Virus record (IMG/VR): IMGVR_UViG_3300028840_001395
Coordinates: 1 to 64,000 of that record
Strand: one strand, 5' to 3'
DNA length: 64,000 nt
How positions within the stretch are numbered: position 1 is the first letter of the stretch; every line of letters begins with the position of its first letter. Below the pieces are notes generated by a model, which had not been told where the DNA came from, ran no database searches, and saw only the letters and a list, made by a program, of their open reading frames with translations. The translations under genes were made by a program, and so were the position numbers. Shown here one piece after another: positions 7,951 to 42,159 of the stretch.

Positions 7951-8549
7951 CAGAGCGCCTCCAGCAGATCGGGGTCGGGCTGGAACTCCACGTAGGACGG
8001 ATCTCCCAGAATGTCCTCCCGCTTGATGAGGAACAGGCAGTTCCCGCATCCCAGCAGGGGGACACTCTGTCCGCTGCGCCGCTTGTAGATGGCCTTCCTC
8101 AGTGCCTCCTGCTTGCACTTGGGGCACAGGTAGCTGCCGGAGTCCAACTCCCCCTGCGTCGCCTTGTACTGCCGGTCGGCAGAAGCCCAGTAGATGGCCT
8201 TCTTGACGAAGGCTCGGGCCACCCGCTCACGGGTGTTGTGGTCAGACGAAGTGTGGGGGAGCTTGTCGGGGCCACCAGGGACATCCACCGTACCTGCTCC
8301 ACCGGGGATGTTGTCGTCCCCGACCTCGGGGGGCTGGTAGTCCTTGGACTCATACCGCTGGAGATCCTCGACAGCCATACGGGCGGAACCTGTGGAGAAC
8401 TCCACATCCACCATGCCGATTGCAGGCCAGACGGCCTGCACTCTCCCGCTCTGGGCCGCGTGCTCCAGGATGGGATACACGATGTCCCCGACCTGGAACT
8501 CCTTGGCCCGGCGCTGGTAATCGACGTATGCCTGCTTGGTCTTCGGCAC
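7950..8549 (-). CDS. Hypothetical virion protein, SH3-like N-terminus plus C4 zinc ribbon
   Basis: FQVGDIV..GRVQAVW; CPKC...CGNC; carries RERVARAFVKKA motif. Confidence 0.7.
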   Translation of the reverse strand: MPKTKQAYVDYQRRAKEFQVGDIVYPILEHAAQSGRVQAVWPAIGMVDVEFSTGSARMAVEDLQRYESKDYQPPEVGDDNIPGGAGTVDVPGGPDKLPHTSSDHNTRERVARAFVKKAIYWASADRQYKATQGELDSGSYLCPKCKQEALRKAIYKRRSGQSVPLLGCGNCLFLIKREDILGDPSYVEFQPDPDLLEAL

Positions 8550-8567: not shown

Positions 8568-9269
8568 CTACGCGGTCAGGACGTAGCCGTGGGAGGCCTT
8601 CTTCTCCTTGGCCTCCTCTTCCTTCTCTTCCTGCATGGACTTGGCGGCCTCCTCCTCGGAGTCGTCGGCGGCCTTCTTCTTGCCGCCTTCCTTCTCGTCG
8701 CCGTCGTCCTTGTCCTTGGCCTCTTCCTTCTTCTTCTCGATGTTCTTCAGGAACTCGGGAGGAAGATCCTTCTTGGCCTGGCGAACGACGGTCGCGGCGA
8801 GGTTGAGCGCCTTCTCGACCTGGGCTGCGGCCTCCTTGGGGAGGTCACCCTCACCGATGGCGGCAGCGAGGCCACCGAGGGCAGCCTGGACGCCGGGGCG
8901 CGGGGCCTGGGGATCGGTCGTGATGCGGTCGGGGCCGATCTCGCCGCCCTGCTGCTTCTCGCGCAGCTCGCGGTTCTCCTGCTGCGAGAACTCGCCCTTC
9001 ATGTAGGCCTCATCCGGCTCGTCCTCCAAGGGACCGGCCTTCTCACGCCCGATGTCGTCGGGGTCGAAGCCCTGCTCCTTGACGACATCATCGCCGGTCA
9101 GTGCGACCTTCTCCAGATGATCGGAGAGCATGTCACACCGCAGCGAGAAATCGTGAGCGATCCGCTTCTCGACCCCGAGGGTCTGGAAGTCCACCTCGAA
9201 CAGGTTGGCGAGCCGATCCAGGTCCGCTGTCACGGCCTGTGCGCCCTTCTTGGTCAGCTTCTGGGTCAT
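8568..9269 (-). CDS. Hypothetical head-associated protein with charged C-terminal tail
   Basis: AGGAGG RBS before ATG 9269 (MTQKLTKK); late motif upstream; tail shared with the scaffold-like protein. Confidence 0.75.
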   Translation of the reverse strand: MTQKLTKKGAQAVTADLDRLANLFEVDFQTLGVEKRIAHDFSLRCDMLSDHLEKVALTGDDVVKEQGFDPDDIGREKAGPLEDEPDEAYMKGEFSQQENRELREKQQGGEIGPDRITTDPQAPRPGVQAALGGLAAAIGEGDLPKEAAAQVEKALNLAATVVRQAKKDLPPEFLKNIEKKKEEAKDKDDGDEKEGGKKKAADDSEEEAAKSMQEEKEEEAKEKKASHGYVLTA

Positions 9270-12200
9270 CGTCTGGTTCCTCCTCCGAGTTCCATCCGTG
9301 GAAGCTCTGCTTGGGCACACACTTGCCCTTCGCTTATAAGGTTCCACGTATAGAAAGAAGATTGAAAAACTTTGGGCGAAGATGCGAAACTTTGAGCCTC
9401 TTTGCCCTGCGACTTGTACTTCTTGTCGAGATTCCCGATGTCCTGTTCCTCGACCGTATCTCGAATTTGTGCCCCCGTCAGAGAGTCCGGAGCAGGTTCA
9501 CCTATGATCTCACGGGCAATATCCTGGGCAATCTCGACCTGCTGGACACGAGCCTTGTTCGAGACTTCGTTGCACTTATTGATCTTTTCCGGGTCACCCT
9601 CGGCATCTGCCAGGCACTTCATCAGCTCCTTCTGGATCTGGGCGAACCGCTTATCGTTCCGCAGCGCCCCCTGGGCCGACTTGACCTTTTCGTCAACCTC
9701 ATCCTGGTCGTCGGTGCCATTCTCCCCCTTCCGGGCCGTCTCGGTCAGGAAAGCGTGGATCGTGGTCATCCCGTCCAAGTGGAGGTCTTTCAGCATATCG
9801 GTCAGAACCTTGGCGGACTGCTTGTCCTCGTCCTCATCCGAGGAAGCCTTCTCCTTGATCACCTTGATCATGTCCTTGTAGGGGCCGTTTTCACCCCCTA
9901 CCAAGGAGTACAGCTCATCGTCGGACACCTCTGACATCACCCCCTGTACAAGTTCCCGGCCAGCCGGGCTGTGGAACTCATCCGTGGACATCCCGACGAG
10001 CTTCATCGCCTCGCCCTTCTTGTGAAGGGCCTTGACCAGGGCCTTCATCTCATCGGCGGGTTCCTCCCGGAGGGGGGATATCTTCTCGTCGTTGACCAGG
10101 GCGGCCATCGCCAGGCCATTGGCGATGTTCTGTAGCTCCGCGAACTTGTTCTCATCATCCGTATCTTCGAGCAGCTTCTCCATCTGGGCGATGGCAGCCC
10201 CTCGAAGTTCGGGGGTCATCTTGGAGTACTCCTGGAACGCCTGCTCGGTACGCTGGCGGAGAGCATCCGCGTCCTTGGGCTGGTCGTTGACCTTGGTGCC
10301 TCCAACCAGGGTGGGGTTGGAAACAACCTTCCTGGCCAGCGTCTTGGCAGCGAGGGCCTTGGCGCTGTCCCGGAGGTTCATCCCCTGGCCGAAAGTGTCC
10401 TTCTTCAGCGCCTTGGTGGCCTCTGCGATGGTCTTGTCGGAGAGAGCGTCCCCAGAGAACACGCCCGTCTTGAGCTTCTCAAGCTCATCGGCGTAGGCCA
10501 TGAGGATGGCCCGCTTGTCCTCGTCGCTCTCGACACCCTTGAGTTCCGCCGCGAAGTTGGTATCCCCGACCTGGCGGGCCACGTTGTCGATCTTGTCGAT
10601 GTCCGCCTGGAGCTTCTTCTTCTCGGCCTCGGCCTTCCGCTGCTCAGCCTCTTCCTCAAGGCGCTGCGCCTTCTGGGCGAGGGTTTCTTCCTCAACCTCG
10701 GTCTTCTCATCGGGTGTCAGAGGCTCTCCCTTGGCCTTCTCGGCATCAGAGAGAGCCTTGGACTTCTCAGCCAGGCTGAGACTGACTTCCTCATCCCCCT
10801 TGCCCTTTTCGGCATTCCTCTCATCTGCATCGTCAGGATCGAGCTTGCCCGCAGCCATCGCAGCGGCATTCGCCTCATTCTTGGCGTGGCTATACTCGCC
10901 ATCGGGGAGTCGGAGCCCCCACTCGCCGTTCTCCTTCTGCCAGTAGTCGCCGGGCTTCTTATCCTTGCTGTCCTCGGGAACCTTCCCGGCCAGCCGGTCG
11001 AGCCAGCGCATGGCAACCCGCTTGTAGTTGAGGGAGAGATCCTCGTCTGTGTCCGCCGTGCCGCCCTCGGTGTCCTCATCCCCCATGTCCACCCGCTTCT
11101 TCTTCAGATCCTTGCGGGGTGGCTTGAACTTCGGAGCGGGCTTGACGAGATCCTCGACAGCCTCATCTTCCTTCTCGGCGTGGGTCTTGGTGGCGCGGCG
11201 CGTCATGTAGGTGTGGCCCGGACCCTTGCCCGTCTCCACGAAGCCTCGCTGCTTGAGCATCCTCACGGCATGGGGATTCACGGCATCGAGGCAGAACTTG
11301 ATGTCTGGGAACGGATCGGTCAGGTCATCGTAGTTGCTGATGGCGATGTCCATCAGCTTGCTGCCCAACGCCTTGCGCTGCCAGGCGGGGTCCACCACGA
11401 TGTCGAACTCGTAGCACTCCCGGTCACCAGAATCCGACGAGTCGAACAGAGCTGCCACAAGCTGTCCGTCAACCTCGTATCCGGCTACCCAGTCCTGGTG
11501 AGACAGGACACGGATGCCTACCCGCTGTGCGAGATCCCACGGGTCGGAGCCACGAGGGATGCGCCAGACGAGCTTCGGGGATCCTGCGGTGAGGATGTCC
11601 TCGAACTCCTGGCGGTAGCGGTCGATGATCTCGATGACCTCTGCGAAGCCACCCCCTGCAGCCTGCTTGTCCAGCTTGGTCTTGACCTGGCCCGTCGCCA
11701 GGAAGGTGTCTTCGAGGCCCGGAACGAGATACTGGCTCTTGAGGGTCGAAGGCTCGTGGCCGACCTCCTTGGCGGTCTCTTCCAGAGCCTTCTTGAACTC
11801 CTCCTTGAACTTCTTCTCGCGTTCCTTCTTGTCGTCCGGGGCTGGGTTGCCCTTGTTCCGGATGGCCTTGAGCTTGTTCTGCATCACCCGGTTGGCGTGC
11901 AGCCCCCGGATGTCCTTGGCCGTGATATCCATCGGCTTGAGGTAGTCGTTGACCGTGGTGGAATCGACCTTCACGTCGTCCACCTCGAACACCGGATCGG
12001 TGCCGGACTTGTCCTTGACGGCCTCCCGCAAGACCCGGACGATATCCGGGTCACGGGTCTCCTTCTTCTGGCTCACCCCGGACTTGCCGACGTACTTGAT
12101 CGTGGCCTTGTCCTTACCCACCGTGACGTGCTTGGCCTGCCAGCCGGTGACACCGAAGTGACCTTCCTTGGCCGAGTCGGGGTTGCCCACGCGCTCGTAG

Positions 12201-15200
12201 GTGTCATTGATGAGACCCACAGCCAACGCCGTGAGACGGGTCTTGAGGTCGTCAGAGGACAGATCCTTCTTGACCTTCTTCTGGAGGTCACCGAGCTTCC
12301 CACGGAGCTTCTCGACCCGCTTGGCCTTCTCCCGGTTCCGATGCTGAACCTGGCCTTCCGAATACTCGTAGACTGTGGTGGTGCCCTTGCCGTCCGCCTT
12401 GGGCACTTCCTTCTTCTTCTGGTACTTGGCGGCTACTCGCTCCGCCGGAGTCGCGTTCGGGTGAAGCTCCCGCCACCGCTCGTAGGGAGTCACATTGTCG
12501 CAGTCCGTGGACTCCTCACCGTAGGGGGACTCGATCTCGATGTCCCCGACGCACTCATCGGTCGTCTCCAGAACCTCGGCCCAGACGTACTCGGGCTCGC
12601 CGGTCATCGGCCCGAACACGGCACGCTCACCTTCCTCGAAGGCTTCGCCGTCAGCGGCCATGCGGGAGGCGAAGCGGTCAGCCACGTTCTCGACCAGCGG
12701 GGCGTCGCTGATGAGGAGAGGCACCGAATCCTCGGGGATGACCCAAGAGCCGATCTCCTTGCCATCCTCATCATCGAGTTTCAACTCGGTGTACTTGACG
12801 TTAGCTGCAGCCCGCTTCTTGCGAGGTCTCTTACGGGGTTTCTTGCGGGGCTTCGGCTTGGGCTTGTCCTCGTCGCCTCCGCTTCCCCAGATGCGCTCGA
12901 AGTCCTCCAGATGCTCTTCGGGCAGCTTCTTCATCACGGCCAGCGCAGAGGCATCGCAGAAGTGCTCCTGGGGATGGGTCGATGAGTAGGGCGTCGGGTA
13001 GTTCTTGTTCGCCCGTGCTGACCGGAGCAGCACCTTGCGGATCTCATGAATGGGGATGGGGAGCACCCTGTCCTGGTTCGGAACCTGGAACCAGTAGTTT
13101 TGGTCGTCCATCTTCTCCACGAAGAACGGCCCCTTGATGCGGCGCATCCTGATGGGAAGCTCATCACCCACACCCGGCATCTCGATCTCGGGGGTCTTCT
13201 GACCCACCCGGATGTGGTGCATCTCCCACTCACGCTGGGCCTTCTTGTCCCCGAACTTCTGCCACCACCGATGCGACAATTCGTGGATGATGTTGTGAAC
13301 CACATCCATGTTGAACCGGGCGAAAGGCCGGATATACATGTCGTCCCGCTTGCCGTTGTACCAGGCCATTGTCTTGGCTTGCTGTAGCTGCGGGACGATG
13401 AACACGTCGCCGTAGAGGGTCTTCTTCAGAGTCGCCGGAACCTTGGCTGCCCGGATGAGCTTCGCGGCCTTGTTGATCGTCTTCTTGACGTTCTCCAGCT
13501 TCTTGCCCGTCAACCCCATCGTGTTGTGAACCATGAACGGGCCGAGCTTGAACTTCTCCTCCGTCCCCTCCACCTTGTCGCGCCAGTGCTGGGTCGCGTT
13601 GAGGAAGTCGATGTGCCGCTGGGTCTTCTCCATCCACGGCCCGAACTTGATCGGCATCCGGCGGGCGGACATGAAGTGCCGGGCCGCCAATTCCAGACCC
13701 TTGTGCTTCTTCGCTGGGACGTGCTTCAGGTCGAGCACGCCTTGGGCCACATTCCGGCCATGAACGACGAGCCAACCCCAGGGATTCTTGAGTTGCCTCT
13801 TGATATGGCGATTCTGGAGGGCCTCGGGAGGCACCTGGCGAAGAACGTCTTTCAGGGCCTTCCAGAGTCCCATCAACTCCTGATAGGAATTGGCCAGGTC
13901 TGCGGGGGTTGTGAGCGTCGCCTGCTTCTGGTATCGGAGGGCTACCCGCTCGGCAGATGCCTGCTTCTCCTCGGGCCACGGCTCGGGAGCCGGGCGGATC
14001 TTGAACAGCTTGAGTTCCTTGTTCTGCTTCCGGCCCTTGGGGTAGGGCTCGACCGTGACCACCACATCGCCTTTCGAGTCGGTCTTGAAGCCCTTGATCT
14101 TGCCCTTCTTGTTCTTGTACTTGCCGTAGAGAACCGAGTCTCCGATGTTCAGCTTGAATGTGGCTGCGATCTTCCCACCCTGCACCTCCGAGGGCACCTG
14201 GTAGTAGACGATATCGTCCTCATCGCGCACGTTCAGCCGGTGCGGGGTCTTCTTGAGCATCGAGACCCCCTTCTCGAAGGGAATCATCTTGGCGTTCTTC
14301 AGCACCACATCCCTGTTCCAGACCACCTCCTCGGGATACCCATACTTGGGCACCGTGGGAGTCTGGAACGTGATGGCAACGAGCTTCTCGCCCATCTCGG
14401 GCTTGATGTGCGTGGTCTGCACTCTGGGAACGAAGTGCCCCCAGCGGGACGACACGGCGGTCACGTTGTCCGTCCCGAACTTCTTGTATGGGGGCCTCAT
14501 CTTGAGCTTGCCGTCAGCCAGAATCAGGCGTGCCCGGCGGTTGGTCGTGAAGTGGACGAACGCATCGTCCTTCACGTCCATCAGGTAGTGGGTGTGCTGG
14601 TCTTGAATCGGCGTTCCCAGCCACACCATCCACTCGGGATGAGCCTCGGGAGCCCCTCGGAGGGCCATCTTCGTTCGCCCCCACTCACTGGCATCATCGA
14701 ACATCACAATGAACTCAGGCTGACCGCGAAGTGCCCCCGTGCGCCCCCCGCCCAGCGCCTGACGCACCTTCTTCTCCAGACGACGTGGATTGGCAGCCAG
14801 CACAGGGTCAATCAGGAGAGCCTGGCGGGCGGCCTCGGTGATCTTCTGGAACTCCTTGCCCGTCAGTCCGAACTCCGAAGCGAGTGCCCTCATGTCCATG
14901 ACCTTGCCCGGCTGGGCCAGGACAGCAACGAAGGCATCGGACTCATCGGCGCTCATCTGGACGGTGATCTCGCGGACACGCTGCCGCTGCCGGGCATCGA
15001 GGAACCCCAAACGCTTCCCGGTGGGCATACCCAAGTCCATCAGGTCGAACAAGGTCGCCAGGTCAGCCTTCTTCTCGGCCCAGTTGCCCAGTGCCGAGGC
15101 GAAGCCCTTGTCCTTGCGGGCGATGTCCTTGACCACATCGAGGAGACCCAGGCGCTTCATCTCCAGCAGGGCCTTCTTGCCCACTCCGCCCTCATAGAAC

Positions 15201-16693
15201 GTGTCGATGATCATGTTCGACAGGTGGGACGGCGGGACGTTCTGGAGCTTCTGCCTGTTCCGCTTGATGGAGGCTTCCACGTCCGGGGCGATCTTCAGGC
15301 CATACTTGAGCAAGAACTTGATGGCCCTCACCATCCGGCTCGGGTCGTCCGCGAACACCTTGTCAGGGTTCTGGGGGCACCGGGCAACGCCCTCCTGCAA
15401 GTCCCGCAGGCCACACCCCGTCAGGTCGATGATCTCGGCCTTGTCCGGCCCCTTGGCCAGGTCGAGCAGCCTCCACATCAGCGTGTTGAACGTGAACTCC
15501 CGACGAATCACGTCCTCCTCGATGGTCGAGGGCTCGACCATGTGGGGCTTGTAGCCCTTCCCGGCCTGACCGCCGTAGCTCTCCTTGCGGGCGTTGGCGA
15601 TCTCGATGACCTCACCGTCGAGGTTGGCCCCTCCGACCTCCCAGTCGCCCTTGATGGTCAGGATGGCCACGCCGTAGTTGTTCGTGGTCAGATTGGTCGG
15701 GACAGGAATCGCCCTCTGGAGCTTCTTGGCGAACCACTCCGAATCACGACCAGCCGCGATGGAGTCAATCACCACGTCGATGTCCTTGATAGGCTGGTTG
15801 ATCACGAAGTTGCGGACGGCTCCACCCACGACGTAGGTGTCCTTGGCGACCCCGAGCTTCCGGGCCACGTCCGAGAGGAACTTCATCAGCGCCCGGCTGG
15901 CCTGGTCGGTCATCTCGGACAGGTGTGTCGAAGCCACTCGATTGGCAGTGGCACTGCCAAAAGGAATGGTCTGGAGCTTCGGGAGCCCCCAGACCTCGAT
16001 GTTATCGAACTCCCAGTCGCCTTGGGGCACATCGCCCTTGTAGACCGCCGTGAGGCCGTCCAGGTAGGCCAGAGTGACGTGGGGGCGGTAGATGAGCGGG
16101 AACTTGTCGTCCACCCGAAGGCCTGCGTCAATGAGCTTGTCGCGGAGCTTCCAGCGAATCCCGGCCATGTCGTGACTGTAGCGGATGCCCATCAGGGCGA
16201 CCCTGCGGCCCTTGTCGGGATGGACGAAGTATTCGGGGCCTTGGAGATGGGCTCGAACGGGCTCCCGGATCTCCGCGAAAGCCTCCCGCGAAGCGTTGAG
16301 GAACGCTTCTTCCTGGTCTGCCGGGACGTTCCCGACGTAGAGGAATGTGGCGTGGGGCTTGGACTTGTCCTCGTCGCCCAGCGGGGGGAACTGGCCTGCA
16401 AGCTCCTTCGGGACAGGGATGAAGAATCCGACCCCGGTGCGGTCGCCGGTCTTCTTGCCGTCCTGGGAGTCGGCCTTCTTCTTCGGCTTTGCCGGATCCT
16501 CGCCGTACTTCTTGCCGACCTGGCCGCCCTCGACCTCGCGGTGCTTGACGATATCGCCCTCGTGCTCCTTGCTCCAGGACTTCCAGTGCTTGTCGCAGAA
16601 CCAGGCCCGGCCCCGGCCCTCGGCCCAGACACACTCATGGGTCGGGGGCTTGCTGCATTCCATGCACTTCGACATGGAATGGCGGCCAGCCAT
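9266..16693 (-). CDS. Giant polyvalent virion-associated protein: Zn finger, 2H phosphoesterase, CCA/poly(A) nucleotidyltransferase, ART-like, SH3-like, zincin, topoisomerase IB, GNAT, helical tail
   Basis: PHATF/PHVTL (2H); GGAVRN..KDID, RREFTFN, DDPSR (class II NTase); HFTT...I..G.L; HELSH..QEHF; YERVGN, GKSG, KDIRG, GH...QY (TopIB); VVDPAWQRKALGSKL (GNAT). Start chosen at ATG 16693 with GGAG. Confidence 0.85.
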   Translation of the reverse strand: MAGRHSMSKCMECSKPPTHECVWAEGRGRAWFCDKHWKSWSKEHEGDIVKHREVEGGQVGKKYGEDPAKPKKKADSQDGKKTGDRTGVGFFIPVPKELAGQFPPLGDEDKSKPHATFLYVGNVPADQEEAFLNASREAFAEIREPVRAHLQGPEYFVHPDKGRRVALMGIRYSHDMAGIRWKLRDKLIDAGLRVDDKFPLIYRPHVTLAYLDGLTAVYKGDVPQGDWEFDNIEVWGLPKLQTIPFGSATANRVASTHLSEMTDQASRALMKFLSDVARKLGVAKDTYVVGGAVRNFVINQPIKDIDVVIDSIAAGRDSEWFAKKLQRAIPVPTNLTTNNYGVAILTIKGDWEVGGANLDGEVIEIANARKESYGGQAGKGYKPHMVEPSTIEEDVIRREFTFNTLMWRLLDLAKGPDKAEIIDLTGCGLRDLQEGVARCPQNPDKVFADDPSRMVRAIKFLLKYGLKIAPDVEASIKRNRQKLQNVPPSHLSNMIIDTFYEGGVGKKALLEMKRLGLLDVVKDIARKDKGFASALGNWAEKKADLATLFDLMDLGMPTGKRLGFLDARQRQRVREITVQMSADESDAFVAVLAQPGKVMDMRALASEFGLTGKEFQKITEAARQALLIDPVLAANPRRLEKKVRQALGGGRTGALRGQPEFIVMFDDASEWGRTKMALRGAPEAHPEWMVWLGTPIQDQHTHYLMDVKDDAFVHFTTNRRARLILADGKLKMRPPYKKFGTDNVTAVSSRWGHFVPRVQTTHIKPEMGEKLVAITFQTPTVPKYGYPEEVVWNRDVVLKNAKMIPFEKGVSMLKKTPHRLNVRDEDDIVYYQVPSEVQGGKIAATFKLNIGDSVLYGKYKNKKGKIKGFKTDSKGDVVVTVEPYPKGRKQNKELKLFKIRPAPEPWPEEKQASAERVALRYQKQATLTTPADLANSYQELMGLWKALKDVLRQVPPEALQNRHIKRQLKNPWGWLVVHGRNVAQGVLDLKHVPAKKHKGLELAARHFMSARRMPIKFGPWMEKTQRHIDFLNATQHWRDKVEGTEEKFKLGPFMVHNTMGLTGKKLENVKKTINKAAKLIRAAKVPATLKKTLYGDVFIVPQLQQAKTMAWYNGKRDDMYIRPFARFNMDVVHNIIHELSHRWWQKFGDKKAQREWEMHHIRVGQKTPEIEMPGVGDELPIRMRRIKGPFFVEKMDDQNYWFQVPNQDRVLPIPIHEIRKVLLRSARANKNYPTPYSSTHPQEHFCDASALAVMKKLPEEHLEDFERIWGSGGDEDKPKPKPRKKPRKRPRKKRAAANVKYTELKLDDEDGKEIGSWVIPEDSVPLLISDAPLVENVADRFASRMAADGEAFEEGERAVFGPMTGEPEYVWAEVLETTDECVGDIEIESPYGEESTDCDNVTPYERWRELHPNATPAERVAAKYQKKKEVPKADGKGTTTVYEYSEGQVQHRNREKAKRVEKLRGKLGDLQKKVKKDLSSDDLKTRLTALAVGLINDTYERVGNPDSAKEGHFGVTGWQAKHVTVGKDKATIKYVGKSGVSQKKETRDPDIVRVLREAVKDKSGTDPVFEVDDVKVDSTTVNDYLKPMDITAKDIRGLHANRVMQNKLKAIRNKGNPAPDDKKEREKKFKEEFKKALEETAKEVGHEPSTLKSQYLVPGLEDTFLATGQVKTKLDKQAAGGGFAEVIEIIDRYRQEFEDILTAGSPKLVWRIPRGSDPWDLAQRVGIRVLSHQDWVAGYEVDGQLVAALFDSSDSGDRECYEFDIVVDPAWQRKALGSKLMDIAISNYDDLTDPFPDIKFCLDAVNPHAVRMLKQRGFVETGKGPGHTYMTRRATKTHAEKEDEAVEDLVKPAPKFKPPRKDLKKKRVDMGDEDTEGGTADTDEDLSLNYKRVAMRWLDRLAGKVPEDSKDKKPGDYWQKENGEWGLRLPDGEYSHAKNEANAAAMAAGKLDPDDADERNAEKGKGDEEVSLSLAEKSKALSDAEKAKGEPLTPDEKTEVEEETLAQKAQRLEEEAEQRKAEAEKKKLQADIDKIDNVARQVGDTNFAAELKGVESDEDKRAILMAYADELEKLKTGVFSGDALSDKTIAEATKALKKDTFGQGMNLRDSAKALAAKTLARKVVSNPTLVGGTKVNDQPKDADALRQRTEQAFQEYSKMTPELRGAAIAQMEKLLEDTDDENKFAELQNIANGLAMAALVNDEKISPLREEPADEMKALVKALHKKGEAMKLVGMSTDEFHSPAGRELVQGVMSEVSDDELYSLVGGENGPYKDMIKVIKEKASSDEDEDKQSAKVLTDMLKDLHLDGMTTIHAFLTETARKGENGTDDQDEVDEKVKSAQGALRNDKRFAQIQKELMKCLADAEGDPEKINKCNEVSNKARVQQVEIAQDIAREIIGEPAPDSLTGAQIRDTVEEQDIGNLDKKYKSQGKEAQSFASSPKVFQSSFYTWNLISEGQVCAQAELPRMELGGGTRR
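9350..9365 (-). promoter_or_regulatory. Putative late promoter TCAAT-N7-CTAT
   Basis: Minus strand tcaatcttctttctat, ~80 bp upstream of the 9269 start, inside the 3' end of the giant ORF. Confidence 0.6.
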
Positions 16694-16694
16694 C

Positions 16695-17666
16695 CTAGCT
16701 CCAGGAAACGACTTCAAGGGGCATCCCTTCCCAGACTCGACCCTCATAGAGCCTCATCAGCTTGTCCAGGAACCACTCGTGGGATGCCGGATCCCACGGG
16801 GCATTCCCATCCGCACCGGGCCAATCCGGATTCTGGACAGCGAACTGACCCTCCCGTGCCCCGCCTCGCCCCAGCGTTCGGGGGAGCATGTAGATGCTGT
16901 ACCCCTCGTCCTGGGCGATATCCTTCAGATATCGGTATAGATACGGAGCTTCCGGGCTGTCCCTGAAAGCTCCCTCGATGACGATAGGGACTCCGGGAGG
17001 CACGTCATCCTGCACGTTGATGGTGATGGAACCCTCTGGAACACGGGCCTTGATATACTTGGAGGCCACACGCCTCGATGTCCGCATCTGGAGGATCTTC
17101 CCCGCGTCCTCCTGGGCAAAGTGCCACATGGACTGGACGGTGGAGGCAAACGCCGAGTATAGCTCCTCGGCTGACCTCTCCTGCCCATGACAGGTGACAT
17201 CCGGGTCGTCACAGTGCCGGGCGTTCCGGTAGTCCAGATACATCTGGGCCAGCTCGTCCCGCTTCGCTTTCGGAAGGGCCATGAGGGACTTCATCGGGAC
17301 GCCCAGGATCTTGACCGCCTCATCCACCCACTCGTTCTTGGGCCAGCACACGGGGTTCTTGTCCTCGACACACCTGAAAACGAACTCGAAGACCGCCCGA
17401 AGCTCCTCGGGTTGAGCGGGCCGACCCCAGACGTAGCGGTAGGACTGATCGATGTCCGCCAGGACATCTCCCATCATGTCGGCAGGGCCATCCCCGTTGT
17501 ATAGCTCGGTGCCGTCGTATCTGCCGGGCGGCTCGACATGAGCACCAGGTTCGCCCGGCTGGATAGTCCACCAGCCCGCTGTCCGCTCCAAGTGCGCGAG
17601 AACCTTACGCATCTGGCTTCGGGCTGCGACTTTCTGGGACAGGATCTGGCGCACGCGGGCCTCCAT
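16695..17666 (-). CDS. Hypothetical virion protein (modular)
   Basis: Late motif upstream; QKVAAR and RRVASKYIKA motifs. Confidence 0.7.
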   Translation of the reverse strand: MEARVRQILSQKVAARSQMRKVLAHLERTAGWWTIQPGEPGAHVEPPGRYDGTELYNGDGPADMMGDVLADIDQSYRYVWGRPAQPEELRAVFEFVFRCVEDKNPVCWPKNEWVDEAVKILGVPMKSLMALPKAKRDELAQMYLDYRNARHCDDPDVTCHGQERSAEELYSAFASTVQSMWHFAQEDAGKILQMRTSRRVASKYIKARVPEGSITINVQDDVPPGVPIVIEGAFRDSPEAPYLYRYLKDIAQDEGYSIYMLPRTLGRGGAREGQFAVQNPDWPGADGNAPWDPASHEWFLDKLMRLYEGRVWEGMPLEVVSWS

Positions 17667-17697: not shown

Positions 17698-17713
17698 ATA
17701 GGACTAGAAACGA
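17698..17713 (-). promoter_or_regulatory. Putative late promoter variant (TCGTT-N7-CTAT)
   Basis: Same spacing as the other copies; overlaps portal stop codon. Confidence 0.45.
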
Positions 17714-19401
17714 CCGCCCTCTTCCTCCGGCTTCTCGTACTTGAGCCCGAGGTTCTCGGCAATCTTCTCCGCAGCGTCCGAATTCTCGGCCAGAGCGTCG
17801 CCCGTCCGGCTGTAGATGCCACGGAGAGCCTCGTTGAACGTCGCGTCCTTGAGGGTGAACAGGTCGCGCTTGAGCTTCTCGTCCACCGTGTCCGGGTCGA
17901 GGTTGAGCAGGTCGAGGATGGTGTCGATGTCCAGCGACCCCTTCTGGTAGAGGTTGAACAGGGCATCGAACGTATCGCTGTTGTCCCGCAGAGCCAGGCG
18001 AGTGAACGAGAGCCGGGGGACGATGACTTCCAGATTCCCGTCCTCGTCCTCCTCCACGAAGCCCATTCGGCGGCACATCGGCTTGAAGAAGCCGTCCTCC
18101 ACCAGGTCTTGGAACAGCTCCCGCATGAGCATGTAGCGGGTGTTGATGACTTCCAGGTGAATCCGGTCGCCCGAGTAGGACGACTCGCCCGACAGAAGGC
18201 TCTCGGTCACGCCCAGGCCCGCATACATCTGCCGGTCGGTGAAGTCCCAGACCCACGACCAGTCGGGAAGCCGCTGGTCTGCTCCCATCTCTTCCCAGTT
18301 GACCTGGAAGTTGGTGATGATGGAGTAATCCGGGTCTTGCAGAGCGAGATCGACCTGCTCCCGAAGCTCCTCGGTCTGTTCCTCGTTCATGTCCTCGGCG
18401 TAGACGAGCCGGTAGGGCGTCATGTGCCGGGAAGCGATGGACGTGAGGCTCTGACGCACCTTGTCACGGAATACCAGCGTCCTCATGCACCGCTGGAGGA
18501 TGCTCTGACCCCGATCCTCGTAGTCCGCCCGCTTCCGCTGGAGGCAGTAGAGGTAGGAGCCCGCGTCAGGGTCCATGTTCAGCGGGATGTTCTCCCCCGC
18601 CTTGATGGACGCCACAACGCCCTCGGGCATCGAGTTGACGATACGGATGGCCTGAGCATCACCCTGCTCGGCCTTCTCGATGATGTTCTTCGTCTTGCTG
18701 TCGGGGATGAGTTCGACCAGCTTCTCATCGGTGAACGGGAAGCTCTCCATGTGGATCTGCTCGGGAGGGAGCACACGGATGGCCGTCCAGCCCTTGTAGT
18801 TCTTCTTCAGCCAGGCAACCTCGCGCTCATCGGCATCCTCGTAGACCTGCCACTTCTCGACGGTCTCGCCCTCGGCGGTGATCTCTCGGATGCACTCCTC
18901 ACGGATCTCGCGGGGCATCTCCGGCGACGTGTCCTCGCAGAAGATGTTGGCCTCGCCCAGCAGGTTGTAGTCGTGGCTGATGCTGATGAGCCGGTGCAGC
19001 AACTTGATGTTCTTCGCCCACCGCTCACAGAACCGCAGGGCCTTCTTCCCTAGCTCCTTGTCCTTGCACTTGGGCGGGGCCAGCCGGAGCTTCGACAGCG
19101 GCAACTCAGTGTGAAGATCGACCGCCTGACCGACGAAGGGCTCGTACTTGTAGAAGAATCGGTAGAAGTTCCGCTGCTCATCGATGCTCTGGGGAAGCTC
19201 AAGGAAGTCCGTGGACAGCTCGGGCGAATACCAGTTGCCGCCCATTCCCAAGACGGTCTGGCCACCGGCACCCCAGACCGAAGCGTTCTTCATCTTCATG
19301 GCGGAGGTGACAATCTTGCTGGGCTTGCCAACCGTGACGTTGCCCCTGACGGGCTTCATCTCTGCCACCTTGATGGTGTGCTCTGGGTCGTTCTTCGTCA
19401 T
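17704..19401 (-). CDS. Portal protein
   Basis: 565 aa downstream of TerL; RFFY..EPFV.QAVD.HTELPLS, RGQSILQR, GLGV...LLSGE.SYS patterns typical of large-phage portals. Confidence 0.8.
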   Translation of the reverse strand: MTKNDPEHTIKVAEMKPVRGNVTVGKPSKIVTSAMKMKNASVWGAGGQTVLGMGGNWYSPELSTDFLELPQSIDEQRNFYRFFYKYEPFVGQAVDLHTELPLSKLRLAPPKCKDKELGKKALRFCERWAKNIKLLHRLISISHDYNLLGEANIFCEDTSPEMPREIREECIREITAEGETVEKWQVYEDADEREVAWLKKNYKGWTAIRVLPPEQIHMESFPFTDEKLVELIPDSKTKNIIEKAEQGDAQAIRIVNSMPEGVVASIKAGENIPLNMDPDAGSYLYCLQRKRADYEDRGQSILQRCMRTLVFRDKVRQSLTSIASRHMTPYRLVYAEDMNEEQTEELREQVDLALQDPDYSIITNFQVNWEEMGADQRLPDWSWVWDFTDRQMYAGLGVTESLLSGESSYSGDRIHLEVINTRYMLMRELFQDLVEDGFFKPMCRRMGFVEEDEDGNLEVIVPRLSFTRLALRDNSDTFDALFNLYQKGSLDIDTILDLLNLDPDTVDEKLKRDLFTLKDATFNEALRGIYSRTGDALAENSDAAEKIAENLGLKYEKPEEEGGRF

Positions 19402-19736: not shown

Positions 19737-19990
19737 TTCGGCCCCCACTTGTGCTTCTTGGTCATCTGGCCCTTCTCGTAGGCGGCCTTGAGCACCTTCT
19801 TGAGCTTCCGGATATCGGTGGGGGAGCCCTTGAAAACCCGCTCCCACGACCCTCCGGCTCGCACAAACACGTCGGAGATCAAGCTGAACTCCTCCGGCAC
19901 GTATTCTACCTTACCCTCCAAGGTCGAAACTGTCAGCTTCTTGATGAACCGATGGTCGGCCCGAACAGGGCTACGGGGGTCAATGTCCAT
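19733..19990 (-). CDS. Hypothetical protein
   Basis: Translationally coupled to TerL. Confidence 0.65.
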   Translation of the reverse strand: MDIDPRSPVRADHRFIKKLTVSTLEGKVEYVPEEFSLISDVFVRAGGSWERVFKGSPTDIRKLKKVLKAAYEKGQMTKKHKWGPK

Positions 19991-21864
19991 CAGCGCCTCC
20001 CCCGAATCCGACCATGTGCGATGGGGGACCTCTGCCGATCTGGACTCGTGCCCAGCTTACGGGCGTTCAGCCGGGCCTTTCTCATGGCCGACTGCATCTG
20101 CTTCTGTCCTCGGATAGCCCCGGAGCGACCTCCCGTGTGGACACCCGTGATGTAGCGAGTGTTGCCGAGATTCTTGCTGGCGAGCCAAACCATACGGACG
20201 ATTGCGTCCGAACGGTCATCATGCTTTCCATCCACGTTGGGCGCAGCCACGGTGGTCACGTACTTGGAGTGATACTGGGCCTGCAGCTCCAGCATCTCCT
20301 GGATATAGTCGCAATGTTGCTTCCCGGCATCCTGTGGGATGGGCCAGTCATACAAGACCAGCCGCTTGTCCCACATCATGTCCTTGAAGTTGCGGAAGAT
20401 CTCGCTGGTCAGGTTCTTCGTGAAGTGCTCAGACCGAAGCTGCTTGAGGCCCTTCTTTGCCAGTGCCTGCTCGAACGCGATGCCGGACCACTGATCGAAC
20501 AACCCCTCGGTCATGTAGAAGCGCCGGGAGTAGTTGAACACCCACTGGGCGACCTCATCGAAGTCCAGCCGGTCCACGTTCTCGTAGTCGCCCTCCCCGG
20601 CCTTGATCTGCTCCACCAGGTCGAGGACAATCTTGGCCTCCCCGTCAATCATCTCGATGTGGCCGATGGCGATGGCCGATGCGTCACCCACCAGGCCCAG
20701 GTCGATGCCGACGAAGTGGGGTCGCTTGGCCGGAGCCTGGGTCATCGGACGGTGGCTCGGGTCCACACACTCGATGAGGTCTGACTCTCGCTCGATCCAG
20801 CCCTTCGTCCGGTCGGAGAACTCGCCCCCGAACTCGGTGAAGAACACCACCGGGTCTTTGACGTACTTGCTCTCAAAGTAGCTGCGGGGGATGGTCGGGT
20901 TGACCTCCCAAGACGGTGCTTGGATTGCCAGCATGTCCTGTGAAGCCCGGCCCCCGGCCATCGCCATCTGGTAGAGCTTGTAGAACTGCCCCTGACGGCC
21001 CAGCGGGGACGAGATGGAGAGGATACGACCCTCGACGCCTCCGATGGGGACGGTCGAGTCGTTGGGGTCTTTCTGGGAGAAGGTCGCGGTCGAGGGCGTA
21101 ATGGCGTCGTACACCGCCTGGGCCGACGACTGCTGGGTGCCGTCCGTGAAGTGGGCAAGCTCATCCAAGATGATGATCATGTTGCCCGGACCACGAAGTC
21201 CCTTGGCGATGCAAGAGCGGAAGCTCACCCGAAGAGAAGCCCGTGCTCCAGGGTTGTCGCAGTAGCGACCCGAGTGGTCGATGTCCGCCGGGGTCTGGAA
21301 CCGGGCGTAGGTCTGGGTGTTGTTCGCCGTGTAGGGGGAGAAGAAACCGCACTCGCTGAAGTAGGCCGACACGTCCCGATACAGGATGCCCGCCTGATCC
21401 TTGTCGGTAGCAACGGAGATGATGCCGATCTCCTTGCCAGGCGGGATTCCGTAGTAGCCCTGTGGGTCACCCTTCAGAAGGAGCTTGTAGGTCTCATAGG
21501 CACCCACGGCAGCGGCCAGGTAGGTCTTGCCGGAACGGCGACCGATGACAAGGACAAGCTCGGGACGGTCGTGATCGACCTCCTTGATGTTGCTCCGGCC
21601 CTCGTTGAACAGGTACTCCAGATACTCGCGCTCGGTGAAGTGCCAGTAGCCCGAAAGCTGCCAGTCCTTCGCCACCTTGAACCGCTTCCTGTCATCCAGT
21701 TCGATGCCGTAGTGGGCCTTGAGGATCACGCGCTGGACGGGGAACAGGTGGAGATTGACACCCCACCGAGACTCGCAGAACTCGATGATATTGGCGATCT
21801 GGGAAGTCGCACCCTTGACCGTCTGGCCGACGTTCAGGGCGATGTCAGAAAGCCCGCTCCCCAT
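19990..21864 (-). CDS. terL: Terminase large subunit
   Basis: Walker A GRRSGKT, Walker B IIILDELAHF, ISSP coupling motif, RNase H-like GIDLG and HDDRSDA. Confidence 0.92.
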   Translation of the reverse strand: MGSGLSDIALNVGQTVKGATSQIANIIEFCESRWGVNLHLFPVQRVILKAHYGIELDDRKRFKVAKDWQLSGYWHFTEREYLEYLFNEGRSNIKEVDHDRPELVLVIGRRSGKTYLAAAVGAYETYKLLLKGDPQGYYGIPPGKEIGIISVATDKDQAGILYRDVSAYFSECGFFSPYTANNTQTYARFQTPADIDHSGRYCDNPGARASLRVSFRSCIAKGLRGPGNMIIILDELAHFTDGTQQSSAQAVYDAITPSTATFSQKDPNDSTVPIGGVEGRILSISSPLGRQGQFYKLYQMAMAGGRASQDMLAIQAPSWEVNPTIPRSYFESKYVKDPVVFFTEFGGEFSDRTKGWIERESDLIECVDPSHRPMTQAPAKRPHFVGIDLGLVGDASAIAIGHIEMIDGEAKIVLDLVEQIKAGEGDYENVDRLDFDEVAQWVFNYSRRFYMTEGLFDQWSGIAFEQALAKKGLKQLRSEHFTKNLTSEIFRNFKDMMWDKRLVLYDWPIPQDAGKQHCDYIQEMLELQAQYHSKYVTTVAAPNVDGKHDDRSDAIVRMVWLASKNLGNTRYITGVHTGGRSGAIRGQKQMQSAMRKARLNARKLGTSPDRQRSPIAHGRIRGRR

Positions 21865-41544: not shown

Positions 41545-41578
41545 CCTAGACTACTCTCTCGAAAGGTCTGATGAGCTA
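41545..41578 (-). promoter_or_regulatory. Island repeat/promoter copy 1
   Basis: cctagactactctctcgaaaggtctgatgagcta. Confidence 0.7.
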
Positions 41579-42127: not shown

Positions 42128-42159
42128 CTTTCTATCTCCCGTGGGTGGCTGCCAGCACA

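What the first reader, a model, noticed from the sequence alone, without database searches (positions are those of the whole stretch)
14760..16440. 2H phosphoesterase fused to CCA-adding enzyme: tRNA 3'-end repair or anti-CBASS module
Seen: two HxT motifs directly before a class II NTase that keeps DxD, the flexible loop (RKESY...P) and DDPSR, with RRD changed to RRE. Known: some CCA enzymes use an HD domain to heal cyclic-phosphate ends; 2H enzymes hydrolyse 2',3'-cyclic phosphates, and phage Acb1 is a 2H enzyme that degrades CBASS signals. Inference: 2H replaces HD for repair of toxin-clipped tRNA ends, or acts independently as an Acb1-like protein.
Basis: partly seen in the sequence, partly recalled or inferred. 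Interest (0 to 1): 0.72.

Follow-up and report, generated by a model that had tools for sequence, protein, structure and literature searches.

The report
Huge-phage head protein with tRNA-end repair module
The 2H phosphoesterase and CCA-type nucleotidyltransferase are real, but they are only the front end of a roughly 2,470-residue multi-enzyme protein encoded beside the portal gene of a 436-kb phage, and they most likely heal and rebuild clipped tRNA 3' ends, a possible viral answer to bacterial defences that cut tRNA tails.

Summary
However, the 2H–nucleotidyltransferase pair is only residues ~100–690 of one 2,469–2,493-aa ORF (window 9266–16747, minus strand). That ORF also carries a zincin-like HExxH region, a type IB topoisomerase, a GNAT acetyltransferase and a conserved C-terminal region. 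It lies between the portal and the protease/capsid genes of a 435,804-bp phage that has about 65 tRNA genes.

The 2H domain resembles LigT/ThpR-type RNA 2',3'-cyclic phosphodiesterases (Z 13–15) more than Acb1 (Z 9.2). The transferase has the full class II head-to-tail architecture, but CCA-adding versus poly(A) activity is unresolved.

The same cassette sits in the same head-module position in at least 40 uncultured phage contigs. It appears either as one giant gene or split, and about 18 loci keep the 2H–transferase pair together in an ORF that lacks the topoisomerase. Relatives swap in RNA-repair domains: HAD_SAK_1, RNA ligase, kinases and pyrophosphatase. The genome also encodes Tpt1, RlaP, Pnkp, RtcB and HAD_SAK_1.

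Best reading (~0.5): a tRNA 3'-end healing and CCA-rebuilding module of a probably virion-delivered polyvalent protein. Main caveat: the same 2H clade often occurs without the transferase.

Verdict: a new variant of a known kind, of moderately high interest.

The parts
9266..16747 (-). Giant ORF (2,493 aa from the first ATG; likely start at M19, 16693, or M25, 16675). It holds all the domains listed below.
   Evidence: (database copy 2,469 aa)
16586..16666 (-). N-terminal Cys-rich motif (CxxC...C...CxxH), possibly a zinc ribbon. It also occurs in several homologues.
   Evidence: function not tested
15938..16450 (-). 2H phosphoesterase domain (aa ~100-270), LigT/ThpR-like.
16346..16354 (-). HxT motif 1 (H132-A-T134), invariant in homologues.
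16073..16081 (-). HxT motif 2 (H223-V-T225), invariant in homologues.
14678..15880 (-). Class II (CCA-adding / poly(A) polymerase family) nucleotidyltransferase, head-neck-body-tail (aa ~290-690).
15764..15826 (-). Motif A (GGAVRN) and the catalytic carboxylate pair (KDIDVVID).
15530..15592 (-). Loop between motifs A and B (ARKESY...KPHMVEP).
15482..15505 (-). Motif B variant RREFTFNT. In at least 13 homologues an intein is inserted directly after it.
15314..15349 (-). Motif D, DDPSR (the (E/D)DxxR nucleotide-selecting motif).
13868..14665 (-). Conserved region of unknown function (aa 695-960), including a short lysine-rich segment shared by many relatives.
12758..13870 (-). Zincin-like metallopeptidase region (aa 960-1330). 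HELSH lies at 13271-13285, and the HExxH is invariant in 20 homologues.
   Evidence: weak MPTase-PolyVal and Peptidase_Mx1 hits in some homologues
11735..12346 (-). Type IB DNA topoisomerase catalytic domain (aa 1468-1671).
   Evidence: E 3.2e-24
11237..11491 (-). GNAT acetyltransferase domain (aa 1753-1837).
   Evidence: E 3.2e-5, above cut-off
9269..11170 (-). Acidic, helix-rich C-terminal region (aa 1860-2493). It sits at the C-terminus of all 25 listed giant relatives.
   Evidence: no family found
17704..19401 (-). Portal protein gene, upstream of the giant ORF; a 323-aa ORF (16695-17666) lies between them.
19990..21864 (-). Large terminase subunit gene.
6322..8127 (-). Head maturation protease-like gene, downstream of the giant ORF.
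2891..3766 (-). Major head protein gene.
   Evidence: E 3.7e-50
41576..42247 (-). Tpt1/KptA RNA 2'-phosphotransferase gene. It may remove a 2'-phosphate left by a 2H-type cyclic phosphodiesterase.
   Evidence: E 3e-46
40027..41262 (-). RlaP-family RNA-repair nucleotidyltransferase gene.
43028..43999 (-). Polynucleotide kinase / 3'-phosphatase-like gene (AAA_33 + PNK3P).

Best explanation
The 2H-nucleotidyltransferase pair is the RNA-end repair module of a giant multi-enzyme ('polyvalent'-type) protein encoded in the head-gene block of a 436-kb phage.

Proposed mechanism:
1. [quoted passage not shown] Metal-independent nucleases such as HEPN RNases leave a 2',3'-cyclic phosphate.
2. The LigT-like 2H domain opens the cyclic phosphate and regenerates a 3'-OH.
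3. The class II transferase rebuilds the missing C, C and A.
4. A residual phosphate is removed by other phage enzymes: Tpt1 if it is a 2'-phosphate, or the Pnkp or HAD_SAK_1 phosphatases.

Because the gene sits between the portal and the protease/capsid genes and carries typical injected-effector domains, the protein is probably packed in the capsid. It would then enter the cell with the DNA, possibly after cleavage by the head protease, so that repair is in place before host defences fire.

Shown: domain identities, conserved catalytic motifs, gene position, conservation of the cassette, and the RNA-repair gene set of the genome.
Inferred: the substrate (tRNA ends), CCA specificity, coupling of the two activities, packaging, and the link to Tpt1.
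For: Domains:
- The 2H fold is confident (pLDDT 84). Best matches are RNA 2',3'-cyclic phosphodiesterases: D. radiodurans CPDase Z 14.9, YjcG 14.6 and E. coli LigT 12.9. Acb1 scores 9.2 at rank 39.
- The 2H profile hits LigT-type proteins at E 1e-5 and Acb1 at 0.4.
- The transferase aligns over 400-470 columns with full-length CCA-adding, A-adding and poly(A) enzymes.
- All catalytic motifs are invariant in 17 homologues.
- At least 13 homologues carry an intein directly after motif B, a sign of a strongly conserved site.

The phage's own tRNAs:
- The genome has about 65 tRNA genes, and nearly all encode their CCA. The enzyme is therefore not needed for de novo maturation, which points to repair.
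- It is the only PF01743 protein in the genome.

Linkage of the two domains:
- 93 of 212 proteins of this transferase clade carry the 2H domain, on either side of the transferase (60 N-terminal, 33 C-terminal).
- In 27 of 33 phage loci that have the 2H, it lies in the same ORF as the transferase. In 18 of those 27 loci the topoisomerase lies outside that ORF.

RNA-repair company:
- Relatives carry HAD_SAK_1, RNA ligase, tRNA-ligase-type kinase, Zeta/AAA_33 kinase and InPase.
- This genome has RtcB, Tpt1, RlaP and Pnkp and HAD_SAK_1 next to the tRNA array. It has no other 2H.
- Tpt1 was found in 5 of 11 related records with this 2H clade and in 0 of 10 without it.

Head-module position: the order TerL, portal, cassette, protease, EF-hand protein, capsid is conserved in at least 40 loci.

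Host attacks on tRNA tails exist:
- Cas12a3 cleaves CCA tails, and its authors call viral counters 'yet unknown' (PMC12851939).
- LbaCas13a cuts at A|CCA, and its authors infer a cyclic-phosphate product for the HEPN mechanism (bioRxiv 10.64898/2025.12.03.690598).
- Over-expressed CCA enzyme counteracts the MenT3 toxin (PMC11541572).
Against: - There is no biochemical or proteomic evidence. No close relative exists among deposited phage genomes.
- From the 2H side the linkage is loose. Only 37 of the 150 best representatives of this 2H clade carry the transferase, although many of the rest look truncated.
- The same 2H clade is fused directly to the topoisomerase, to HAD_SAK_1 plus topoisomerase, or to ART-PolyVal. 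Two loci have a 2H-topoisomerase gene after the portal and no transferase nearby.
- Polyvalent proteins often join functionally unrelated domains.
- CCA-adding versus poly(A) polymerase is unresolved. The best solved match is E. coli poly(A) polymerase, and NCBIfam scores for PcnB and CCA models are similar and far below their cut-offs.
- Motifs A and B deviate from the canonical forms (GGAVRN, RRE).
- From general knowledge, LigT-type enzymes leave a 2'-phosphate, which may hinder extension.
- Tpt1 sits 25 kb away in a cluster with RlaP and Pnkp and may serve another pathway.
- The Tpt1 association rests on few, related and incomplete records.
- No MuF domain or other packaging signal was detected.
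Confidence: 0.5

Rival explanations
1. The two domains act independently. The 2H domain is an injected degrader of host immune nucleotide signals (Acb1-like, or a 2'-5' oligoadenylate-type phosphodiesterase). The transferase does something unrelated, such as routine tRNA upkeep.
For: - The polyvalent-protein study predicted that 2H domains in such proteins act as signal degraders or RNases (PMC5512222).
- The same 2H clade frequently occurs without the transferase, next to the topoisomerase or ART domains.
- Acb1 and poxvirus cGAMP phosphodiesterases share the fold at Z 8.5-9.2.
Against: - The nearest structures and profile matches are RNA 2',3'-cyclic phosphodiesterases, not Acb1.
- This 2H clade, unlike those described in 2017, does occur with RNA ligase, HAD_SAK_1 and kinase domains.
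- The 2H usually stays in the transferase's ORF even where the topoisomerase lies outside that ORF.
Confidence: 0.17
2. Housekeeping rather than counter-defence. The protein is a late-expressed, non-packaged tRNA quality-control enzyme that keeps the 3' ends of the phage's ~65 tRNAs, and of host tRNAs, intact during a long infection.
For: - The phage carries a near-complete tRNA set, a tmRNA and further RNA-repair genes.
- Stand-alone CCA-adding enzymes are common in jumbo phages (PMC7824862; PMC7162821).
- Nothing here shows packaging directly.
Against: - The strictly conserved position inside the head-gene block, fused or adjacent to topoisomerase, zincin, GNAT and ART-type effector domains, is not what a housekeeping enzyme needs.
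- The phage tRNA genes encode CCA, and the host normally supplies a CCA enzyme.
Confidence: 0.18
3. The transferase is not a tRNA enzyme. It acts as a poly(A) or other RNA-tailing polymerase that marks host or phage RNAs, for example to speed host mRNA decay. The 2H domain would trim or prepare RNA ends, Usb1-like.
For: - The best solved-structure sequence match is E. coli poly(A) polymerase I (E 3.7e-16).
- The PcnB subfamily model scores slightly higher than the CCA models.
- Usb1 is among the structural matches of the 2H domain (Z 12.7).
Against: - All hits are partial and far below the family cut-offs.
- The fold search does not separate poly(A), CCA-adding and A-adding enzymes.
- The loop between motifs A and B (R-x-E-x-Y ... 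K-P-x-x-V) looks like CCA/A-adding enzymes rather than the poly(A) polymerase aligned. The comparison with CCA enzymes rests on my recollection of their sequences.
- The company of tRNA-repair domains fits tRNA better.
Confidence: 0.1

Closest known systems
Polyvalent proteins of phages and conjugative elements (Iyer, Burroughs, Anand, de Souza, Aravind 2017; PMC5512222)
   Same: One polypeptide carries many conflict-type enzymatic domains (2H, GNAT, zincin-like peptidase; ART and InPase in relatives). It is encoded next to head and portal genes and shows extensive domain shuffling between relatives.
   Different: That paper never mentions a CCA-type transferase, and the word topoisomerase occurs only in its reference list. 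It states that its 2H domains never associate with RNA ligases. Here the core is transferase plus type IB topoisomerase, and relatives do carry RNA ligase and HAD_SAK_1. No MuF domain was detected.
E. coli-type multifunctional CCA-adding enzyme with a C-terminal HD domain (general knowledge: Yakunin et al. 2004; NCBIfam 'multifunctional CCA addition/repair protein')
   Same: A class II transferase is fused to a phosphoesterase that can act on 2',3'-cyclic phosphates, which implies healing plus rebuilding of tRNA ends.
   Different: The healing domain is a 2H fold, not HD, and is placed N-terminal here (either side in relatives). The match to the E. coli model is only 46.7 bits against a cut-off of 451. 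It is part of a phage head-module giant protein.
Yeast/plant tRNA ligase Trl1 (ligase-kinase-2H CPDase) with Tpt1, and phage T4 Pnkp/Rnl1 (general knowledge)
   Same: The logic is heal the broken end, then restore the RNA. A 2H cyclic phosphodiesterase is paired with an enzyme that uses the regenerated 3'-OH, and a Tpt1 gene is present in the same genome.
   Different: The end-using enzyme here is a template-independent transferase, not a ligase. No ATP-dependent RNA ligase was found in this genome, only RtcB.
Acb1 anti-CBASS 2H phosphodiesterase (PDB 7T26/7T27)
   Same: 2H fold with two HxT motifs, encoded by a phage.
   Different: Acb1 is a clearly weaker match than LigT-type enzymes (Z 9.2 against 12.9-14.9; profile E 0.4 against 1e-5). 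Acb1 is a small stand-alone protein, whereas this is a domain of a giant protein.
Stand-alone CCA-adding enzymes of jumbo and huge phages (PMC7824862; PMC7162821; PHROG 2244)
   Same: Same enzyme family, in phages rich in tRNA genes, with a proposed role in restoring tRNA 3' ends.
   Different: Deposited phage enzymes are at most 35% identical, cover only the transferase and lack the 2H. Here the enzyme sits in the structural gene block as part of a multi-enzyme protein.
'Swiss Army Knife' RNA-repair proteins (named in Pfam HAD_SAK_1; Burroughs & Aravind 2016, not available to me)
   Same: Mosaic proteins that combine RNA-end-processing domains. Relatives of this cassette carry HAD_SAK_1, RNA ligase and kinase domains.
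   Different: This protein itself has no HAD_SAK_1; the genome has a separate copy. I could not check whether that paper already describes 2H-CCA fusions.

Membership tests
Class II nucleotidyltransferases (CCA-adding / A-adding / poly(A) polymerase; Pfam PF01743) | Head domain matches the family model above its curated cut-off. | tested here: met
   58.1 bits against a cut-off of 23, E 1.5e-15; 63.3 bits in the genome search.
Class II nucleotidyltransferases (CCA-adding / A-adding / poly(A) polymerase; Pfam PF01743) | Motif A glycine-rich segment and the two catalytic carboxylates (GGxVRD ... DxD). | tested here: met
   GGAVRN (Asn in place of Asp) and KDIDVVID, invariant in 17 homologues.
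Class II nucleotidyltransferases (CCA-adding / A-adding / poly(A) polymerase; Pfam PF01743) | Motif B RRD (ribose recognition). | tested here: inconclusive
   RRE in place of RRD, invariant across the clade. The change is conservative and its effect on activity is unknown.
Class II nucleotidyltransferases (CCA-adding / A-adding / poly(A) polymerase; Pfam PF01743) | Motif D (E/D)DxxR, the protein 'template' for CTP/ATP. | tested here: met
   DDPSR aligns with EDPVR of E. coli poly(A) polymerase. D-D-x-x-R is invariant.
Class II nucleotidyltransferases (CCA-adding / A-adding / poly(A) polymerase; Pfam PF01743) | Helical neck, body and tail domains after the head. | tested here: met
   The model (pLDDT 81) aligns over 400-470 columns with full-length solved enzymes.
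CCA-adding enzyme proper (as opposed to poly(A) polymerase, A-adding or CC-adding enzymes) | Adds exactly C-C-A to tRNA 3' ends. | not testable with these tools
   Sequence and fold matches do not separate the subtypes.
2H phosphoesterases, LigT/ThpR-like branch | Two HxT/S motifs on a duplicated alpha+beta lobe fold. | tested here: met
   H132-x-T134 and H223-x-T225 are invariant. The fold matches LigT-type enzymes at Z 12.9-14.9.
2H phosphoesterases, LigT/ThpR-like branch | Match to the family models. | tested here: inconclusive
   PF13563 scores 26.7 bits (cut-off 27) in the whole-protein scan and 30.2 bits in the six-frame search. TIGR02258 scores 24.5 bits against 65.7. This is a divergent member.
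2H phosphoesterases, LigT/ThpR-like branch | Hydrolysis of RNA 2',3'-cyclic phosphate ends. | not testable with these tools
   Needs an enzyme assay.
Acb1 anti-CBASS phosphodiesterases | Closest sequence and structure relatives are Acb1 proteins; a small stand-alone protein. | tested here: not met
   Acb1 7T26 scores Z 9.2 at rank 39, and profile E 0.4 covering only the second HxT. Here it is a domain of a ~2,470-aa protein.
Acb1 anti-CBASS phosphodiesterases | Cleavage of cyclic di- and trinucleotide signals. | not testable with these tools
   Needs an enzyme assay.
Polyvalent proteins (Iyer et al. 2017) | Two to fifteen conflict-related domains in one polypeptide of a phage or conjugative element. 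| tested here: met
   2H, class II transferase, zincin-like region, type IB topoisomerase and GNAT lie in one ORF of a 436-kb phage.
Polyvalent proteins (Iyer et al. 2017) | Hallmark domains such as MuF, MPTase-PolyVal or ART-PolyVal. | tested here: inconclusive
   No MuF was found. The zincin region gives MPTase-PolyVal hits only in 5 of 20 homologues, at E >= 0.01. ART-PolyVal occurs in relatives, not here.
Polyvalent proteins (Iyer et al. 2017) | Packaged in the virion and delivered with the DNA. | not testable with these tools
   Only the gene position between portal and protease/capsid supports this. That position is conserved in at least 40 loci.
E. coli-type multifunctional CCA enzyme | C-terminal HD phosphohydrolase domain. 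| tested here: not met
   No HD family hit in Pfam or NCBIfam.

The most novel reading that the evidence does not exclude
A large clade of uncultured huge phages injects, together with its DNA, a ready-made tRNA-tail repair enzyme. The repair would be ligase-independent:
1. The 2H domain opens the cyclic phosphate to a 3'-OH/2'-phosphate end.
2. The class II transferase rebuilds CCA across that end.
3. The phage Tpt1 removes the internal 2'-phosphate.

This would be the so far unknown viral counter to defences that clip the universal CCA tail (Cas12a3, acceptor-end-cutting Cas13a and HEPN toxins). It would also give bacterial-type Tpt1 a natural substrate.
Probability: 0.15. Interest if true: 0.85.

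Novelty: new variant of a known kind. Interest (0 to 1): 0.62.

Why it matters
Bacterial defences that cut the universal 3' CCA tail of tRNAs have only just been described. Their authors state that phage tRNAs cannot evade them and that viral counters are unknown (PMC12851939).

A conserved phage module that joins a cyclic-phosphate-opening enzyme to a CCA-type transferase is a concrete, testable candidate for such a counter. It sits in a protein that is probably delivered with the DNA.

The finding also extends the polyvalent-protein concept to huge phages, with a new core (class II transferase plus type IB topoisomerase). It yields a family of several hundred uncharacterised enzymes. It may also suggest a source of 2'-phosphate RNA substrates for phage and bacterial Tpt1.

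Tried and rejected
- Close relatives among deposited phage genomes: none. DNA gave one 57-bp hit. Protein hits were at most 35% identical, covered only the transferase and had no 2H. No virion proteomics can therefore be borrowed.
- ATP-dependent RNA ligases in the genome: PF09414 is absent. PF09511 is also absent, but the control search found nothing anywhere, so that result is uninformative.
- Region aa 695-960: no Pfam, NCBIfam or PHROG match. The Atlas gave only unnamed viral clusters at scores up to 0.86.
- C-terminal region aa 1860-2493: no family and no usable Atlas hit.
- Zincin region against solved structures by profile: nothing.
- The 323-aa ORF between the portal and the giant gene: no family.
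- Deciding CCA-adding versus poly(A) polymerase from NCBIfam models or the fold search: not possible.
- Relative orientation of the 2H and transferase domains in the model: overall pTM is 0.56 and no inter-domain error map is available, so nothing is claimed.
- Burroughs & Aravind 2016, the source of the 'Swiss Army Knife' term: not held. I could not check whether 2H-CCA fusions are described there.
- A strict 2H-transferase coupling: rejected after the search from the 2H side.
- Maturation of phage tRNAs as the main role: unlikely, because nearly all the phage tRNA genes encode CCA.
Full report
**What is at the coordinates**

The finding's interval (14760-16440) lies inside a single minus-strand ORF, window 9266-16747, of 2,493 codons from the first ATG. 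The public protein collection holds the same protein with 2,469 residues, which corresponds to a start at M25 (16675). An ATG at M19 follows a GGAG. The interval corresponds to residues ~103-663.

- HxT motif 1: H132-A-T134.
- HxT motif 2: H223-V-T225.
- Motif A: GGAVRN.
- Carboxylate pair: KDIDVVID.
- Loop: ARKESY...KPHMVEP.
- Motif B: RREFTFNT.
- Motif D: DDPSR.

Profile matches for the whole ORF:

| Domain | Residues | Score |
|---|---|---|
| 2_5_RNA_ligase2 (2H) | 128-234 | 26.7 bits, cut-off 27; 30.2 bits in the six-frame genome search |
| PolyA_pol head | 304-454 | E 1.5e-15 |
| Type IB topoisomerase | 1468-1671 | E 3.2e-24 |
| GNAT | 1753-1837 | E 3.2e-5 |
| PHROG 'tRNA nucleotidyltransferase' | 303-506 | E 2.8e-26 |

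The unit, however, is the N-terminal quarter of a giant multi-enzyme protein.

**The genome and the neighbourhood**

The window is the first 64 kb of a 435,804-bp virus record with direct terminal repeats and 62% G+C. The genome has about 65 tRNA genes and a tmRNA gene.

Around the giant ORF, all on the same strand, lie:
- the large terminase (19990-21864);
- the portal (17704-19401);
- a 323-aa ORF of unknown function;
- the giant ORF;
- two small ORFs;
- a head-maturation-protease-like gene (6322-8127);
- an EF-hand protein (4704-6335);
- the major head protein (2891-3766).

The giant gene is thus part of the head-assembly block.

**The two domains**

*The 2H domain.* Modelled alone with 16 homologues, it is confident (pLDDT 84). 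Its structural and profile matches are:

| Match | Structure (Z) | Profile vs solved structures (E) |
|---|---|---|
| D. radiodurans CPDase | 14.9 | 0.034 |
| B. subtilis YjcG | 14.6 | – |
| T. thermophilus TT0787 | 13.6 | 0.01 |
| P. horikoshii PH0099 | 13.0 | 1.3e-5 |
| E. coli LigT/ThpR | 12.9 | – |
| Phage Acb1 (7T26) | 9.2, rank 39 | 0.4, second HxT only |

So the domain belongs with the LigT-type RNA end-processing branch. This does not prove its substrate.

*The transferase.* The model of residues 95-700 (pLDDT 81) aligns over 400-470 columns with full-length class II enzymes. These include E. coli poly(A) polymerase, Thermotoga and Bacillus CCA-adding enzymes and the Aquifex A-adding enzyme. 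Head, neck, body and tail are all present.

Sequence searches likewise hit all subtypes with similar, partial scores. CCA-adding versus poly(A) activity therefore cannot be decided here. From my recollection of CCA-enzyme sequences, the loop pattern R-x-E-x-Y...K-P-x-x-V resembles CCA and A-adding enzymes rather than the poly(A) polymerase aligned. This is a lead, not a test.

RRE in place of RRD, and GGAVRN in place of GGxVRD, are invariant in the clade. They are clade features, not decay.

At least 13 homologues carry an intein with a homing endonuclease inserted directly after RREFTFNT. This is typical of a strongly conserved functional site.

**The family**

The module has hundreds of metagenomic relatives at 45-70% identity. 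None is closer than about 35% among deposited phage genomes, and those cover the transferase only.

Relatives range from ~400-aa stand-alone transferases to giants of up to 4,243 aa on contigs of up to 528 kb. Most giants combine the transferase with the type IB topoisomerase. Variable extras are:
- 2H, DUF5661, ART-PolyVal and inteins;
- NUDIX, RNA ligase, HAD_SAK_1 and InPase;
- PAP2 phosphatase, superoxide dismutase and ChaC;
- a tRNA-ligase-type kinase, a Zeta/AAA_33 kinase, cREC and GNAT.

In 79 IMG/VR loci, I searched the translated DNA with this window's proteins. The order TerL, portal, cassette, two small ORFs, protease, EF-hand protein, small ORF, capsid recurs in at least 40 loci.

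The cassette is fused in some phages (3,381 aa in L005). In others it is split into a 691-aa 2H-transferase gene, a 445-aa gene and a 1,359-aa topoisomerase gene (L004). In 27 of 33 loci that have the 2H, it lies in the transferase's ORF. In 18 of these the topoisomerase lies outside that ORF. The C-terminal region of this protein sits at the C-terminus of all 25 listed giant relatives.

**How tight is the 2H-transferase link?**

Seen from the transferase side, 93 of 212 clade members carry this 2H: 60 upstream (44 directly abutting) and 33 downstream. That sample was retrieved with a query that contained the 2H, so it is biased.

Seen from the 2H side, an exhaustive profile search found 246 representatives at E <= 1e-30. 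Only 37 of the best 150 contain the transferase. Many of the others look truncated, but 36 have at least 300 residues after the 2H with no transferase.

Sampling these shows 2H-topoisomerase, 2H-HAD_SAK_1-topoisomerase and 2H...ART-PolyVal proteins. Two of their loci have the same position after the portal and no transferase nearby.

The 2H is therefore a mobile member of this head-module cassette. It is often, but not obligatorily, joined to the transferase. This weakens the coupling argument and keeps the independent-function rival alive. Even so, its non-transferase partners again include an RNA-end phosphatase (HAD_SAK_1).

**RNA-repair context in this genome**

- Nearly all phage tRNA genes encode their CCA. 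The transferase, the only PF01743 protein in the genome, is therefore not needed for primary maturation.
- The genome encodes RtcB.
- It has a stand-alone HAD_SAK_1 right beside the tRNA array.
- Inside the window it has a cluster of RlaP, Tpt1/KptA (E 3e-46) and a Pnkp-like kinase/phosphatase.
- No Rnl2-type ligase was found.
- No second 2H was found.

From general knowledge, LigT-type 2H enzymes open a 2',3'-cyclic phosphate to a 2'-phosphate/3'-OH end, and Tpt1 removes internal 2'-phosphates. RtcB ligation produces none. The only evident source of Tpt1 substrates in this phage would then be the 2H domain.

Among 21 related records, Tpt1 was present in 5 of the 11 with a strong hit to this 2H clade and in none of the other 10. 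Adding this genome gives 6 of 12 against 0 of 10, one-sided Fisher p = 0.012. Dropping one of a near-identical pair gives p = 0.023. The records are related to one another and mostly incomplete, so this is only suggestive. Tpt1 also sits with RlaP and Pnkp, so it may serve another pathway.

**Best explanation and rivals**

I consider it most likely (about 0.5) that the pair is a tRNA 3'-end healing and rebuilding module. The 2H would open cyclic-phosphate ends left by metal-independent nucleases. The transferase would restore C, C and A. The phage's phosphate-removing enzymes would finish the job.

The position in the head block, the effector-type partner domains and the adjacent protease suggest that the protein is packed into the capsid and delivered with the DNA, as proposed for polyvalent proteins (PMC5512222). 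This step is inferred only.

Targets for such repair are now known:
- Cas12a3 cleaves tRNA CCA tails. Its authors state that viral tRNAs cannot circumvent this and that counters are unknown (PMC12851939).
- LbaCas13a cuts at A|CCA, and the authors infer a cyclic-phosphate product for the HEPN mechanism (bioRxiv 10.64898/2025.12.03.690598).
- Over-expressed CCA-adding enzyme counteracts the tail-extending toxin MenT3 (PMC11541572).

The rivals are:
- independent action of the 2H as a signal degrader (0.17);
- a non-packaged housekeeping enzyme (0.18);
- an RNA-tailing enzyme that does not act on tRNA (0.10).

**Comparison with what is known, and novelty**

CCA-adding enzymes in jumbo phages and their proposed repair role are known (PMC7824862; PMC7162821). 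Polyvalent proteins with 2H, GNAT and zincin domains are known (PMC5512222). Automatic annotations already label some relatives 'tRNA nucleotidyltransferase/2'-5' RNA ligase'.

Three things appear not to be described in the papers I could read:
- a class II transferase as a core domain of head-module polyvalent proteins;
- its pairing with a type IB topoisomerase;
- a LigT-like 2H clade that, unlike the 2017 description, keeps company with RNA-repair domains.

I could not read Burroughs & Aravind 2016, which may mention related fusions.

I rate this a new variant of a known kind. Interest is moderately high because it offers a testable candidate for the missing viral counter to tRNA-tail cleavage.

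Noticed in passing
window 40027-43999, minus strand: An RNA-repair gene cluster: an RlaP-family nucleotidyltransferase (40027-41262), a Tpt1/KptA 2'-phosphotransferase (41576-42247) and a Pnkp-like kinase plus 3'-phosphatase (43028-43999). No RNA ligase was detected beside them, and the 780-bp gap 42247-43028 holds only short ORFs.
   Followed up: partly
window 11735-12346 and 11237-11491, minus strand: A type IB DNA topoisomerase and a GNAT acetyltransferase lie in the same giant ORF. The transferase-topoisomerase pairing is the commonest core of the giant relatives. From general knowledge, poxviruses package a type IB topoisomerase in their virions, which may be a parallel.
   Followed up: partly
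window 4704-6335, minus strand: A 543-aa head-module protein with a canonical EF-hand calcium-binding loop (aa 260-278, E 2.6e-9). tblastn found homologues in the same position in 23 related loci.
   Followed up: no
window 16586-16666, minus strand: A Cys-rich N-terminal motif (CxxC-x8-C-x12-CxxH) precedes the 2H domain. It is shared by several homologues, some of which have long inserts between it and the 2H. It may be a zinc ribbon; its role is unknown.
   Followed up: no
homologues P0123, P0132, P0139, P0151 and others; corresponds to window ~15480: At least 13 homologues carry an intein with a LAGLIDADG endonuclease inserted at the same point, directly after motif B (RREFTFNT) of the transferase. 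Inteins also sit in terminase-like and portal-like genes of some relatives (L087, L088).
   Followed up: partly
genome G000:C1 85246-122868, 90688-91048 and 241943-242033 (outside the window): Two large tRNA arrays (about 65 genes) and a tmRNA gene. A lone tRNA with anticodon CUA (amber suppressor type, called 'Pyl' by ARAGORN) lies at 241943-242033. Several tRNA-like genes have odd anticodon loops. I did not examine whether TAG is recoded anywhere; the 323-aa ORF next to the giant gene ends in TAG.
   Followed up: no
genome G000:C1 84063-84449 and 101242-102504 (outside the window): A stand-alone HAD_SAK_1 phosphatase directly beside the first tRNA array, and an RtcB RNA ligase between the two arrays.
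   Followed up: partly
window 12758-13870, minus strand: A zincin-like region with an invariant HExxH (HELSH at 13271-13285) and a conserved downstream EEHF. Its position within the giant protein varies between relatives. It gives only weak matches to MPTase-PolyVal and Peptidase_Mx1.
   Followed up: partly
window 32607-49277, minus strand: Replication and recombination genes surround the repair cluster: clamp loader, primase-like protein, sliding-clamp-like protein, PD-(D/E)XK nuclease, N6/N4 DNA methylase, HNH endonuclease, calcineurin-like phosphoesterase and RecA.
   Followed up: no
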